DNA of 64,000 nt from Gekko japonicus (lineage: Eukaryota). The notes under the pieces are model-generated. The model made no database searches and was not told where the DNA came from. It saw only the letters and a list, made by a program, of their open reading frames with translations. Below are positions 22,359-26,362 of the stretch, in pieces (positions within the stretch are counted from its first letter, which is position 1; each line of letters begins with the position of its first letter). The stretch is from assembly GCF_001447785.1 (NCBI RefSeq), contig NW_015175982.1, positions 453,980 through 517,979 of the forward strand, given 5' to 3'. The position numbers were made by a program, and so were the translations under genes.

Positions 22359-23024
22359 ACACTTTAACTACAAGAAGTTACAAAGGATCCAGCAATTTAA
22401 ATGGCACAAGATACAAAAAGAAAGATATTGCTGTGTATGTTCATCAAATTCTCAAATTTCCAAGTTATATTTTGTTTTTCAGATACATTAAACAACTCAA
22501 CAAGAACAAAGTCTTCAAGAGAGAAGAAGAAGAAGGACGGACCTTCCCGGGCTTTCTGTAGTCCGTTTCGAACAATATCTTTTTCAGACGTCAATTCATG
22601 TTGTCTGTAGTGTTTTTACAATTCCAATCTTGGCTGTATATGTGGTGTTTACAAAAGTTCAAAAGTGGCTGCTCATAGCTCTACTGTCTACCGGTCTCCA
22701 TGAATGGTCTCCATGAATGGAGACCGGTAGACAGTAGAGCTATGAGCAGCCACTTTTGAACTTTTGTAAACACCACATATACAGCCAAGATTGGAATTGT
22801 AAAAACACTACAGACAACATGAATTGACGTCTGAAAAAGATATTGTTCGAAACGGACTACAGAAAGCCCGGGAAGGTCCGTCCTTCTTCTTCTCTCTTGA
22901 AGACTTTGTTCTTGTTGAGTTGTTTAATGTATCTGAAAAACAAAATATAATTTGGAAATTTGAGAATTTGATGAACATACACAGCAATATCTTTCTTTTT
23001 GTATCTTGTACACTTTAACTACAA
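22359..23024. mobile_element. Foldback insertion 1, probably Penelope-like-element derived
   Basis: Near-perfect inverted arms 22406-22701 / 22717-23009; direct repeat acactttaactacaa at 22359-22373 and 23010-23024; unpaired segment 22374-22405. Confidence 0.8.
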
Positions 23025-23204
23025 AACACTATCCATGTGGTGAAGCAGATACAAGTCCTGATGGCTTAGGCCAGATGGATCCCAATCATCCCCAAGCTGG
23101 TATTTACAATGGGGGTGGGGGGCTGAAAGACCTGACATTTTTCTGCTTCATAAAAGGTTTTAATATGATCAGCTGTTTTAACCAATCAATACACCAGCCT
23201 ATAC

Positions 23205-23517
23205 CAGGCGTCCCCAATGGGCTGCCCAAGGGCACCATGGCACCCGCTGACTGCCCAAGGGCCCCTGCCAAGTGCCTTTAGAAAGTGGGTGGGGCCAGGT
23301 GGGGCTTTTGCCCAGCATGGGCTTCTGACTGGCCGTGCAGATTAAAAGGCATCCTGAAATGTTGAAGAGGTACTATTAGAGTTCCACATAAACACCTTGC
23401 TCCCTGACATTTTGTGGCTGGCTCTTTCTCCTGCAGCAGCCATTTGGTGACTGTGCCTATCACCCTGTGTCAGAAATCCAAAGGTGCCCATAGGCTCAAA
23501 AAGGCTGAGCACCCCTG
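23205..23517. mobile_element. hAT MITE
   Basis: cagg...cctg ends; imperfect TSD gcctatac / gcttacac. Confidence 0.65.
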
Positions 23518-23599
23518 GCTTACACATTACAAAACCTATCTCAACACAGGCAATAGGATGCTTTTTATAAAGATAATCATTGTGCATTCTCTTATTTAA

Positions 23600-23826
23600 C
23601 TGTTTGGGGGGTTTTTTGCCATCAAACCACAGCTGACTTATGGAAATCCCTGGTGGGGTTTCCAAAGCAAGAGACATTCAGAGGTGGTTTGCCAGTGCCT
23701 GCCTCTGCACAGCAACCCTGCTACTCCTTGGTGGTCTCCCCCATCCAAATACTGACTAAGGCTGACCCAGCTTAGCTTCCAAGATCTAATGAGATCAGGC
23801 TAGCCTGAGCTATCCAGGTTAGGGCC
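23600..23826 (-). mobile_element. 5S rRNA-derived SINE
   Basis: Minus strand cctgatctc...gaagctaagc.gggtc...agtatttggatggg.gagacc (5S internal control region) followed by a BovB-like tail. Confidence 0.78.
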
Positions 23827-24299
23827 TTATTTAATTAATTATAATAATAACCCCCCACCCCATACACTGAATATTCTTTCACAGGAGACACCTACATATT
23901 TAAAGAAAGCAATTCCTTTATTCATTCAAGAAAATTCTGTAACTCCTTAGGGCTGAAAACCTTCCTTAAATGGCCATACCAGAAGAAGGGTTAATTTCTG
24001 TCCCTAATCATTGCACTAACTACGTTACACCACTGGCCTCTCTTAGTATGGTGTAAATGTGATCCTTTAATATGAGTATGACCTGTCAGAGAAGTATGCA
24101 ATCTAACAAACAAATTAGACTAACACTACAATCCTAAACAGAATTATACTCCTCTAAGCCCACTGCTTTCGATGTACTTAGAAAGGTATAACTCTGTTTG
24201 GGATTGTACTGTAAAGGCATGGATTTATACAAAAGTTGTAAAAAAGCAGGATCTGTTGTTTATAGTCTCTGTCAGGAAGAATTTATATGGATTTATTAA

Positions 24300-24946
24300 G
24301 GCCAGGGGGAAACAGGGTTGTCATATGGCCCCATAAACACGAGATCACATCCAGCCTGAGCTGAAGGCATTGTACTGGCTGCCAATAGCATACCAGATTC
24401 GTTTCAAGGTGCTGGTTTTGACCTTTAAAGCCTATATGGTCGGGGCCTGCCTACCTGAGGGACCGCCTTTCCCCATATGTGCCCCAGAGAGCACTGAGTT
24501 CAGGGTCGCAGAATCACCTGACTCTCCGTGGCCCAAAAGACGCCAGTCTGGCCATAACGAGGGCCAGGGCTTTTTCAGTGGCGGCTCCACACTGGTGGAA
24601 TGAGCTCCCGGAGGACATCAGAGTCCTGCGGGACCTTTTACAGTTCTGCAGGACCTGTAAAACGGAGCTCTTCCACCAGACCTTCGATTAGGAGCCACCA
24701 CTGATGAATGTACCATCGTAAATCGAACATGCCATGGCCCTATTATAACGTCGGATGGGCTTTTCTTACTGGATCAGACATAGGAAACTGCCGCCATCTG
24801 TTTGCACTGTTTGTACTAGCACTTTATGCAATTGTTTATTATTAATTTTATGGTATCTATTGATTTTATTGTATTTTAACTTATGTAAGCTGTCTTGAGC
24901 CAGTTTTTACCGGCAAGGTGGGGTATAAATTGGAAATAAATAAAAA
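24300..24946 (+). mobile_element. L2 LINE 3' fragment
   Basis: RDHI.P.L..LYWLPIAYQIRFKVLVLTFKA, RAFSVAAPHWWNELP, and a (taaa)n tail. Confidence 0.85.
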
Positions 24947-25965
24947 ATATATTTTAAAAAGTTTAGCTAGATAACAGAACATCCTAACCATGTTTAATTG
25001 GTCCATTTGCTGGCCCAGGTTTTAAGCTTTATTTTACTTTATTTTCAGTTTCTAATCATTACGGATCCAGAGCAAAATGTGGAGGTAATGTTCTGCCTGA
25101 TTCTCCAATGAAAAATAAGCCCATTGCTAAACTGTAGTTAATGGGGGTATTCTGGGGCTGCCGGCTCTGGGCTGAGAAATTCCTGGAGATGTTAGGGGTG
25201 CAGCCTAGGGAGGGTGGAGGTTGGGGAGGGAAGTGACCTTAGTGGGTTAAAATGCCATAAAGTCCACCATCCAAAGGAGCCATTTTCTCCAGGGGAATCT
25301 GTAACCTGGAGAACAGCTGTAATTCCAGAGGATCTCCAGCCACCACCTGGAGACTGGCAACCCTAGGGTATTCACCGCTGTACTTGATAGGAAAGGGAAG
25401 AAGTAATACTTAGGTTCATTTTCCTCTTAAATGTACTGAAGGACAAAGTGCCATTGAACCGTCTTTGCTTGTTAGACAGCAATACTTTTATTCTTCTGGA
25501 TCCTTACTGAATAGTATCTGCTACCTTGGGTGCTGGGCCTGAAATGTCTGATTTTAAGTTGCCCTGCCCCAGGATCCTGACTTCCAGCTTCTTTTCTAAC
25601 ATACACTCCACTTTCCTTTATGACCTTGATTCCCAGGTCCATACGCTCCACTTCCCTCCTAACCCGATATCCCATTCCTCCACCCTCACGATGTTGACCA
25701 CTAAGCCTAAAGAATGGTACACAATATAACTTTTTCATGTTATACTAGTATCTGTCAGGGTTGCCAACCTCCTGGTGGGTCCTGTAGACCCATAGCATTT
25801 CATGAGAGATGGCAGCTCTGGAAGGTAGAGTCTATGACATCACGTCCCTGCTGAGTTCTCTCCCTTCCCCAGACTCCACTTTCACAAGGGTCTGCCTTCA
25901 AATCTCCAGGAATGTCTGGGTCTGGAGTTGGCAAGCCTAGTAGCTAGGGAAATGTTCACATCAGC

Positions 25966-26362
25966 TTTAGTAAGTTATACCAAAAGAGAATAAACCGTGA
26001 TAACCTGACTAATTAACAATTCTTACAAATCCATTTTATATTTAAATGAACTGTGCATATAACATGTGAAAAATTATATTTAAATTGCATGGAAAAGTTA
26101 CAATACTTGTTTCTTGTATAAAAATTCAAAACCTTTGAAATATTTAACAATCTTTCAAAGGTTTTGGATTTTTATACACGAAAAAACAAAGATTGTAACT
26201 TTTCCATGCAATTTAAATATAATTTTTCACATGTTATATGCACAGTTCATTTAAATATAAAATGGATTTGTAAGAATTGTTAATTGGTCAGGTTATCACG
26301 GTTTATTCTCTTTTGGTACGTGTATTTCCGTGATTCTCTCGGTTTGTTTTAGTAAGTTATAC
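25966..26362. mobile_element. Foldback insertion 2, probably Penelope-like-element derived
   Basis: Inverted arms 25981-26140 / 26153-26315; direct repeat tttagtaagttatac at 25966-25980 and 26348-26362; unpaired segment 26316-26347. Confidence 0.78.

What the first reader, a model, noticed from the sequence alone, without database searches (positions are those of the whole stretch)
22359..26362. Two sequence-unrelated foldback insertions share one geometry: 15-bp TSD, inverted arms and a 32-nt unpaired tail
Seen: element 1 is TSD 22359-22373, tail 22374-22405 (32 nt), arms 22406-22701 / 22717-23009, TSD 23010-23024. Element 2 is TSD 25966-25980, arms 25981-26140 / 26153-26315, tail 26316-26347 (32 nt), TSD 26348-26362. 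In both, the short arm abuts the TSD and the long arm runs exactly 32 nt further. I see no sequence similarity between the two elements. Established: Penelope-like elements (GIY-YIG endonuclease retroelements) often insert with an inverted, 3'-truncated pseudo-LTR copy and a tail of roughly 30-35 nt. Inference: a fixed molecular ruler (nick stagger plus fold-back stop point) shared by distinct PLE families, producing self-complementary insertions.
Basis: partly seen in the sequence, partly recalled or inferred. Interest (0 to 1): 0.78.

Follow-up and report, generated by a model that had tools for sequence, protein, structure and literature searches.

The report
Penelope-type hairpin insertions with 32-base tails
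Two unrelated short hairpin-shaped insertions in this lizard-type genome carry the layout that Penelope-like jumping genes are already known to leave behind, so the pattern is real but ordinary.

Summary
Element 1 (22359-23024) and element 2 (25966-26362) are each an inverted pair of arms inside an exact 15-bp target duplication. In each, one arm runs 32 nt further than the other, and the two elements show no detectable similarity to each other.

A contig of a related species (organism C) runs straight from 22358 to 23010. This is an empty site with one copy of the 15-mer, so element 1 is a true, young insertion. Its family reaches about 25-64x depth in reads of organism A and is absent from organisms B and C. 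Element 2 is older and low-copy, and its arm plus tail also occur in B and C.

An inverted 5'-truncated copy, a TSD and a 30-40 bp "tail" at one end make up the published signature of Penelope-like elements. A 2024 study equates the tail with the stretch between two internal reverse-transcription start sites. I found no RT/GIY-YIG ORF and no canonical hammerhead. The "ruler" rests on n=2 and is largely already in print.

A third foldback (34687-35096) has no TSD. An unchecked note of this scan (s1-821628) reports a similar insertion elsewhere in this genome.

The parts
22359..22373 (.). E1 left target-site duplication (15 bp)
   Evidence: An exact direct repeat with 23010-23024 (D13). Only one copy is present in the organism C contig, which joins 22358 to 23010 (table 8, record 17).
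22374..22405 (-). E1 32-nt tail, the 3' extension of the long arm
   Evidence: Global alignment of the arms. It is absent from the empty site. The bin 22251-22401, which holds 28 of its 32 letters, has depth 7.3 in raw reads, against about 1 in unique flank. The tail therefore belongs to the repeated family, not to the target.
22406..22707 (-). E1 left arm (read centre to outer end on the minus strand)
   Evidence: (I1, I3). Depth in run X13 is 63.9 and 25.2.
22708..22710 (.). E1 hairpin turn (3 nt)
   Evidence: I1: 3 nt between the arms.
22711..23009 (+). E1 right arm (the short arm, which abuts the TSD)
   Evidence: 98.0% over 302 columns.
23010..23024 (.). E1 right target-site duplication
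   Evidence: D13.
22826..22882 (+). Hammerhead-like block in E1, mirrored in the left arm. It has GAAAC, a stem with a palindromic loop and GUC. It lacks a CUGANGA box and a helix II.
   Evidence: Read and shared with E3. Rfam gives no hit. The fold is no better than shuffles (z 0.48).
25966..25980 (.). E2 left target-site duplication (15 bp)
   Evidence: D14: exact.
25981..26144 (-). E2 left arm (the short arm, which abuts the TSD)
   Evidence: (I2, I5).
26145..26148 (.). E2 hairpin turn (4 nt)
   Evidence: I5.
26149..26315 (+). E2 right arm
   Evidence: Contigs of organisms B and C match from 26149 onward (records 15 and 22).
26316..26347 (+). E2 32-nt tail
   Evidence: It is covered by contigs of organism B (to 26340, and through into the flank) and of organism C (to 26348) (records 15, 16 and 22).
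26348..26362 (.). E2 right target-site duplication
   Evidence: D14.
34687..35096 (.). Third foldback (E3), related to E1 through the hammerhead-like block. Its arms are 97% alike, the right arm has an internal deletion of about 100 nt, the turn is 12 nt, and no TSD or measurable tail was found.

Best explanation
E1 and E2 are non-coding, 5'-truncated (or short non-autonomous) insertions made by the retrotransposition machinery of Penelope-like elements (PLEs).

Shown here:
- E1 is a bounded insertion with a 15-bp target duplication.
- The arms are inverted copies of one template.
- The 32-nt extension on one arm is element sequence.
- Both families have other copies.

Inferred from published work on PLEs:
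- The GIY-YIG endonuclease nicks both target strands, here 15 bp apart.
- Both 3' ends prime reverse transcription on element RNA at one of two internal start sites that lie about 30-40 nt apart.
- An insertion whose two ends used different start sites therefore carries a tail on one side only.
- The two antisense cDNAs are joined head to head, or one cDNA snaps back on itself. This gives arms with their 3' ends outward and a tight 3-4 nt turn.
For: - Geometry: verified to the base.
- Empty site: record 17 of organism C (3038 letters) lies on 22100-22358 and, with no letters between, on 23010-23251 (table 8). In organism B a contig of depth 25 covers both flanks, and depth is 0 in 22553-22854 (tables 2, 3, 8).
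- E1 family is multi-copy in raw reads of organism A. X13 depth, both directions summed, is 63.9, 25.2, 30.6 and 7.1 across the arms. The unique flanks give 1.06 and 0.99 (table 2).
- Private variant: at 22489, 53 of 54 reads and 4 of 4 X11 contigs read C, where this copy has T. The partner base 22926 is the complementary A. Both arms therefore share a private variant and come from one template.
- E2 arm plus tail is present in organisms B and C (records 15, 16, 22).
- Literature:
  - PMC8557442 (passages): an inverted 5'-truncated copy, and a 30-40 bp tail often present at one end only.
  - PMC3846280 (passages): a 31-bp tail at the 3' end of one inverted pLTR, TSDs of 8-10 bp, and palindromes at inverted junctions read as self-priming.
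  - PMC2377424 (passages): a 34-37 bp repeat in D. virilis Penelope.
- Unchecked notes of this scan report PLE copies with RT/GIY-YIG elsewhere in this genome.
Against: - No PLE protein is encoded in either element, and no reading frame runs through either terminus (read).
- Of 29 ORFs of at least 110 aa in the window, 29 were scanned against Pfam. The only hit is an RVT_1 at 35721-36206(-), which I read as Ty3/gypsy-type. There is no GIY-YIG.
- Rfam finds no hammerhead at E up to 10 in 22000-26800, or at gathering score in the whole window.
- The hammerhead-like block of E1/E3 lacks the CUGANGA box and helix II and folds no better than shuffles. E2 has no such block.
- I could not extend either family towards a coding copy.
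- The published Anolis start sites lie in an AC-rich stem-loop inside the ORF. Here the termini are U-rich and non-coding.
- No read spanning a hairpin turn was shown to me, so the two-armed form rests on the assembly.
Confidence: 0.72

Rival explanations
1. The hairpin itself is the transposing unit. E1 and E2 would be short non-autonomous foldback elements, copied as whole units by PLE enzymes acting in trans. In that case the 32-nt asymmetry is inherited from a master copy and is not re-made by a ruler at each insertion.
For: - Depth is fairly flat along the E1 arm: inner bins sum to 55.8 and outer bins to 71, not the steep 5' decay of random truncation.
- Two contigs, from organisms B and C, match E2 starting at the same base, 26149, the edge of the turn (records 15 and 22).
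- Both elements are non-coding.
- PMC3846280 (passages) reports pLTRs alone mobilising foreign inserts in trans.
Against: - The E1 arms are more alike (1 substitution and 1 indel) than this copy is to the family majority (53 of 54 reads differ at 22489). That fits arms made afresh at insertion.
- De Bruijn-graph contigs tend to break at hairpin turns, so the shared start at 26149 may be an assembly effect.
- The depth bins are coarse.
Confidence: 0.17
2. The insertions were made by another reverse transcriptase, a LINE such as CR1, L2 or RTE. The cDNA snapped back, or twin priming occurred, and the similar numbers are coincidence.
For: A 15-bp TSD is in the usual range for target-primed reverse transcription by LINEs (my recall). 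An unchecked note of this scan (s1-818650) describes a twin-primed LINE in this genome.
Against: - Neither outer end carries poly(A) or a microsatellite.
- Twin priming gives an inversion without duplication of the same segment (my recall of the L1 model).
- An element-derived one-sided extension of 30-40 nt is described only for PLEs in the papers read (PMC11167929 abstract).
Confidence: 0.07
3. The second arm of one or both elements is an assembly artefact, a chimeric or fold-back long read.
For: - Papers warn that PLE inverted structures trouble assemblies (PMC8557442, passages).
- No read across a turn was listed.
- In run X11 (organism A), contig record 1 starts 15 unlaid letters before 23010, which I cannot explain.
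Against: - Both elements sit inside exact 15-bp duplications.
- The E1 flanks are collinear with an empty site in another species.
- The arms differ by a substitution and indels, which a read folded on itself would not give.
- No joint at the centres was reported (table 5, but 943 rows were not shown).
Confidence: 0.04

Closest known systems
Endonuclease-bearing Penelope-like elements (Penelope/Poseidon, Neptune, Nematis), in particular the inverted-pLTR plus tail insertion form
   Same: A head-to-head inverted copy with the 3' ends outward, a TSD, and a one-sided 3' extension within the published 30-40 bp range (31 bp in A. vaga Pen2a, 34-37 bp in D. virilis). The turns are tight and palindromic. 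The targets are AT-rich: 11 and 12 of the 15 TSD letters are A or T.
   Different: There is no RT/GIY-YIG ORF and no canonical hammerhead. The termini do not lie in an ORF start. The arms are fully symmetric with nothing between them, whereas the typical form has a short inverted pLTR next to a long direct copy. The TSD is 15 bp, against 8-10 bp in the rotifer examples read.
Poseidon of Anolis carolinensis (PAc) in vitro system (PMC11167929)
   Same: It gives the mechanism that fits: both target strands are cleaved and extended, two internal RT start sites exist, and the stretch between them is the genomic tail. A stem-loop at the start site is reported there. Here a 7-bp stem brackets the short end in both E1 and E2.
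   Different: The PAc start sites lie 111-118 nt into the ORF, in an AC-rich loop. Here the sequence is non-coding and U-rich in the reading I take as sense. The exact PAc tail length is in figures and supplements that I could not see.
L1-type twin priming or 5' inversion
   Same: Two primings from the two nicked target strands, inside one TSD.
   Different: Twin priming inverts one part relative to the other without copying the same segment twice, and it leaves a poly(A) end. Here the same 165-300 nt stretch is present twice and there is no poly(A).
Metazoan retrozymes (non-autonomous hammerhead repeats; PMC7229834, passages)
   Same: Short, non-coding, AT-rich elements, possibly PLE-dependent.
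   Different: Retrozymes are direct tandem repeats with canonical type I hammerheads. E1 and E2 are inverted pairs without a canonical hammerhead.

Membership tests
Penelope-like element insertion | A single ORF with a PLE-type RT and a GIY-YIG endonuclease, in the element or in longer members of its family | tested here: not met
   No frame runs through either terminus. All 29 of 29 window ORFs of at least 110 aa were scanned: there is no GIY-YIG, and the only RVT_1 is an unrelated LTR-type fragment. Whether longer family members encode it cannot be tested with these tools. Truncated PLE copies normally lack the ORF.
Penelope-like element insertion | An inverted 5'-truncated copy adjoining the element head to head (inverted pLTR) | tested here: met
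   arms 98-99% alike (E1) and about 95% alike (E2), with 3-4 nt turns.
Penelope-like element insertion | An element-derived 30-40 bp tail at one end only | tested here: met
   The tail is 32 nt in both elements. The E1 tail is absent from the empty site and is multi-copy in reads. The E2 tail is present in copies of two other species.
Penelope-like element insertion | A target-site duplication from staggered nicks | tested here: met
   Exact 15-mers. One copy stands at the empty site of organism C for E1. The empty site of E2 was not seen.
Penelope-like element insertion | A hammerhead ribozyme in the pLTR | tested here: inconclusive
   Rfam gives no hit. E1 and E3 share GAAAC, a stem with a palindromic loop and GUC, but the CUGANGA box and helix II are missing and the folds are no better than shuffles. 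E2 has none. The arm may be truncated downstream of the ribozyme. Naiad and Chlamys PLEs also lack canonical hammerheads (PMC8557442).
LINE twin-priming product | An inversion without duplication of the same segment, with a poly(A) or microsatellite 3' end | tested here: not met
   The same segment is present in both arms, and there is no A-run or microsatellite at either end.
Terminal-inverted-repeat DNA transposon, MITE or foldback element | Symmetric inverted termini and a short TSD of fixed, superfamily-specific length (11 bp or less, by my recall) | tested here: not met
   The termini are asymmetric by 32 nt and the TSD is 15 bp.

The most novel reading that the evidence does not exclude
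PLE reverse transcriptases may pick their two start sites by a structure and a fixed distance rather than by sequence.

In both unrelated elements a perfect 7-bp stem brackets the short start site. Its 5' strand lies 21 nt (E1) or 14 nt (E2) upstream of that site. Its 3' strand sits in the middle of the tail (tail positions 10-16 in E1, 13-19 in E2). The second start lies 13-16 nt past the stem.

If that stem plus the enzyme dimer is the ruler, any short RNA carrying such a stem could be mobilised in trans. The 32/32 and 15/15 agreement would then reflect one enzyme serving several non-coding hairpin families in this lizard lineage.
Probability: 0.15. Interest if true: 0.5.

Novelty: new member of a known kind. 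Interest (0 to 1): 0.25.

Why it matters
It matters little beyond annotation. The two insertions are textbook-style examples of the Penelope-like insertion signature in a squamate genome.

E1 has modest extra value as a young, lineage-specific family. It has tens of copies in organism A, none in organisms B and C, and an empty orthologous site. This suggests that PLE machinery was active recently in this lineage.

Short symmetric hairpin copies with cleanly defined ends would also be convenient material for a test. One could ask whether the two start sites seen in vitro for one Anolis element hold across families, and what sets their spacing.

Tried and rejected
- **Canonical hammerhead.** Rfam at E up to 10 on 22000-26800, and at gathering score on the whole window, gave none. 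The only strong Rfam rows are microRNA models matching the hairpin turns, which I take as artefacts of the palindromes. RNA folds of the E1 and E3 hammerhead-like blocks and of the tail regions are no better than shuffles.
- **Other copies in the window.** blastn of both long arms against the window found only the partner arms. Short hits at about 50255 and 32643 proved to be CTT-rich low complexity when read.
- **E3 as a third data point.**
  - No direct repeat of 8 nt or more lies within 100 nt of its ends.
  - An exact 10-mer at 34482 and 35096 looked like a TSD. I rejected it because 34474-34621(-) is exon 1 of a host SOUL/heme-binding-type gene, with splice signals and conserved homologues.
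  - Similarity of the E1 tail to E3's left flank is not significant: 240 of 2000 shuffles do as well.
- **RVT_1 ORF beside E3** (35721-36206, minus strand). From its motifs I read it as LTR-retrotransposon-type, not PLE. That classification is my reading and was not tested.
- **Inverted similarity 34137-34305 v 35163-35336** (72%). This is another repeat family, not part of E3.
- **Microhomology at the short-arm junctions** (3 nt in E2; 6 of 9 in E1). I judged it too weak in AT-rich sequence.
- **The search of earlier findings by sequence**, with both arms, gave nothing.
- **Papers.** Pyatkov et al. 2004 (endonuclease stagger) is not held, so I know it only through the 2024 paper's description. 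PMC5718144 held nothing on insertion structure. One search, a search for the 2004 endonuclease paper, a search on gecko, Penelope and squamate transposable elements, were seen as listings only and added nothing. Supplements are closed and I did not ask for them. Figures S1B and S2 of PMC11167929 probably hold the exact PAc tail length and genomic end distributions.
- **Limits.** Its tables of joints, ends and loose ends were filled by the very high-copy repeats between the two elements. It therefore did not show where E1 or E2 family copies end, nor any reads across the turns.
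Full report
**1. Is it there?**

Yes.

- **E1.** The 15-mer TSD stands at 22359-22373 and 23010-23024. It is exact and not extendable. The left arm is 22406-22707, a 3-nt turn follows, and the right arm is 22711-23009. The arms differ by one substitution (22464 v 22951), one 3-nt indel and two unpaired positions next to the turn. 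The left arm continues for exactly 32 nt (22374-22405) to the TSD.
- **E2.** The TSD stands at 25966-25980 and 26348-26362. The arms are 25981-26144 and 26149-26315, with a 4-nt turn (I5) and 94.7% identity over 170 blastn columns. The right arm continues for 32 nt (26316-26347).
- **One caveat.** The first three tail letters of E2 also pair with the last three letters of the left TSD. Its tail is therefore 29-32 nt, depending on where that microhomology is assigned.
- **Chance.** An exact 15-mer shared by two 60-nt flanks occurs in 1 of 3000 random placements in this window.
- **Unrelatedness.** E1 and E2 are not detectably similar. Their local score is 49, against 39.4 +/- 6.5 (max 59) for 200 shuffles.

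**2. Are they real insertions?**

I laid four public runs on 22100-26600: raw reads X13 and contigs X11 of organism A, contigs X4 of organism B, and contigs X5 of organism C.

- **Empty site of E1.** A 3038-letter contig of organism C (record 17) lies on 22100-22358 and continues, with no letters between, on 23010-23251. This is an orthologous empty site holding one copy of the 15-mer and no tail. In organism B a contig of depth 25 covers both flanks, and depth is 0 over 22553-22854.
- **Divergence and age.** The flanks differ between organisms A and C by about 4-6% (10 other letters in 259, then 14 in 242). The E1 arms differ by well under 1%. So E1 entered after these species split.
- **Copy number of E1.** In the raw reads of organism A the unique flanks have depth 1.06 and 0.99, both directions summed. 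The four bins across the arms have 63.9, 25.2, 30.6 and 7.1. That makes tens of arm-equivalents in the genome.
- **Tail of E1.** The bin holding 28 of the 32 tail letters has depth 7.3. If the 123 flank letters in that bin are at about 1, the tail stands at roughly 35. This is my arithmetic and is rough, because reads are lost near ends. It means the tail belongs to the repeated family and occurs on something like half of the arms.
- **Shared private variant.** At 22489, 53 of 54 reads and 4 of 4 X11 contigs read C. This copy has T, and the partner base 22926 in the other arm is the matching A. The two arms therefore share a private variant and come from one template.
- **E2 is different.**
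  - Its depth is only 5.4 and 9.4 in organism A.
  - In organism B the depth is 94 and 150, against about 21-25 for single copy.
  - In organism C the depth is 69 and 164, against about 8-13 for single copy.
  - Contigs there match from 26149 to 26340 (B, record 15) and from 26149 to 26348 (C, record 22). The second stops within one base of the tail's end.
  - A third contig (B, record 16) runs collinearly from the arm through the tail and TSD into the right flank, which is a high-copy repeat. This suggests the insertion is old enough to be shared, but I could not prove orthology.
- **Limits.** The tables of joints and loose ends were swamped by the very abundant repeats between the two elements. 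I saw neither family-wide end positions nor reads across the turns.

**3. What are they?**

The layout matches what the literature describes for Penelope-like elements.

- PMC8557442 (passages): insertions are 5'-truncated. An inverted 5'-truncated copy often adjoins the 5' end. A 30-40 bp tail is often present at one end only.
[quoted passage not shown] TSDs are 8-10 bp, and some copies have none. Palindromes at inverted junctions are read as self-priming.
- PMC2377424 (passages): D. virilis Penelope has a 34-37 bp repeat.
- PMC11167929 (main text read):
  - A purified Anolis Poseidon protein cleaves and extends both target strands.
  - It starts reverse transcription at two adjacent internal sites of the RNA.
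  - The authors equate the genomic tail with the stretch between those sites.

So the geometry is the known PLE signature, and the two-start-site account explains a one-sided tail without a fold-back stop point.

Two steps remain inferred here: that both nicks primed, and how the two cDNAs were joined. The tight 3-4 nt turns fit a snap-back. They fit equally well an end-to-end template jump between two cDNAs that both ran to a fixed 5' end.

**4. What does not fit, or could not be shown?**

- **No coding capacity.** Neither element encodes anything, and no frame runs through either terminus. Pfam scans of all 29 window ORFs of at least 110 aa gave only one RVT_1, an unrelated LTR-type fragment at 35721-36206(-), and no GIY-YIG.
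- **No hammerhead in Rfam**.
- **Hammerhead-like block in E1 and E3.**
  - E1 and a third foldback, E3 (34687-35096), share a block with GAAAC, a stem with a palindromic loop and GUC.
  - Their overall local score is 79, against 38 +/- 7 (max 70) for shuffles.
  - The CUGANGA box and helix II are missing, and the folds are no better than shuffles.
- **E3 adds no length data.**
  - It has no TSD.
  - The one candidate 10-mer lies inside exon 1 of a host SOUL-type gene.
  - Its possible tail cannot be delimited.
- **Membership** therefore rests on layout, on the multi-copy evidence, and on unchecked notes that coding PLEs exist elsewhere in this genome.

**5. The 'ruler'.**

Two equal tails (32 and 32, or 32 and 29-32) inside a published 30-40 range, plus two equal TSDs, are suggestive but are n=2. 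Published TSDs vary. An unchecked note (s1-821628) reports a 13-bp TSD on a similar insertion in this genome.

One thing I noticed speaks to a structural ruler. In both elements a perfect 7-bp stem brackets the short end.

- In E1, 22427-22433 pairs with 22390-22396.
- In E2, 26295-26301 pairs with 26328-26334.
- In each, the 3' strand of the stem sits in the middle of the tail.

A stem this long arises in 268 of 5000 shuffles for E1 and 62 of 5000 for E2. It also arises at 9.1% of random window positions. It is a lead, not a finding. The 2024 paper also places the start site in a stem-loop.

**6. Verdict.**

The interpretation as PLE-type insertions is well supported by layout but not proven by coding homology. 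The mechanism claimed as new is essentially in print.

I rate this a new member of a known kind, of low to moderate interest. Its main value is as clean material for testing what sets the spacing of the two start sites.

Noticed in passing
window 34687-35096: A third young foldback (E3). Its arms are 97% alike, the turn is 12 nt, and the right arm lacks about 100 nt that the left arm has. It shares the hammerhead-like block with E1, has no TSD, and lies about 65 nt upstream of the start codon of a host gene's first coding exon.
   Followed up: partly
window 34474-34621 (-) and about 33150-33256 (-): These are exons of a host gene of the SOUL/heme-binding-protein type. The first has a start codon, an upstream splice acceptor and a downstream donor. 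Homologues of 60-308 aa begin with the same roughly 50 residues, and two of them carry Pfam SOUL.
   Followed up: partly
window 22427-22433 with 22390-22396; 26295-26301 with 26328-26334: In both unrelated elements a perfect 7-bp stem brackets the short-arm end, and its 3' strand lies in the middle of the 32-nt tail. Shuffles reach 7 bp in 268 of 5000 (E1) and 62 of 5000 (E2). Random window positions reach it 9.1% of the time.
   Followed up: partly
window 23157-23911, 24365-24817, 25120-25421, 26328-26600: Very high-copy repeats lie between and beside the two elements, with raw-read depth in the hundreds to about 9,700 against about 1 for unique DNA. The stretch 23707-23826(-) gives a weak, sub-threshold 5S rRNA match (23.6 bits), so it may be a 5S-derived SINE.
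   Followed up: no
window 29191-29298 (+): A 5S rRNA match above Rfam's gathering score (41.7 bits). It could be a gene, a pseudogene or a SINE head.
   Followed up: no
window 35718-37244 (-): Fragments of an LTR-retrotransposon pol: an RVT_1 at 35721-36206, and ORFs upstream that I read as integrase-like. They are out of the usual order, so the copy is decayed or rearranged.
   Followed up: no
window 27326-27752; also 18676-18898 and 62750-62943: Older, GC-richer palindromic repeats with arms 72-79% alike, built around a TTTAAAGGGCC-type motif. They are a different family from E1-E3, and I did not look for TSDs or tails.
   Followed up: no
No X11 contig carries this copy's T at 22489. E1 may be absent or different in that individual, which would make it a polymorphic insertion, or this may be a contig artefact.
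   Followed up: no
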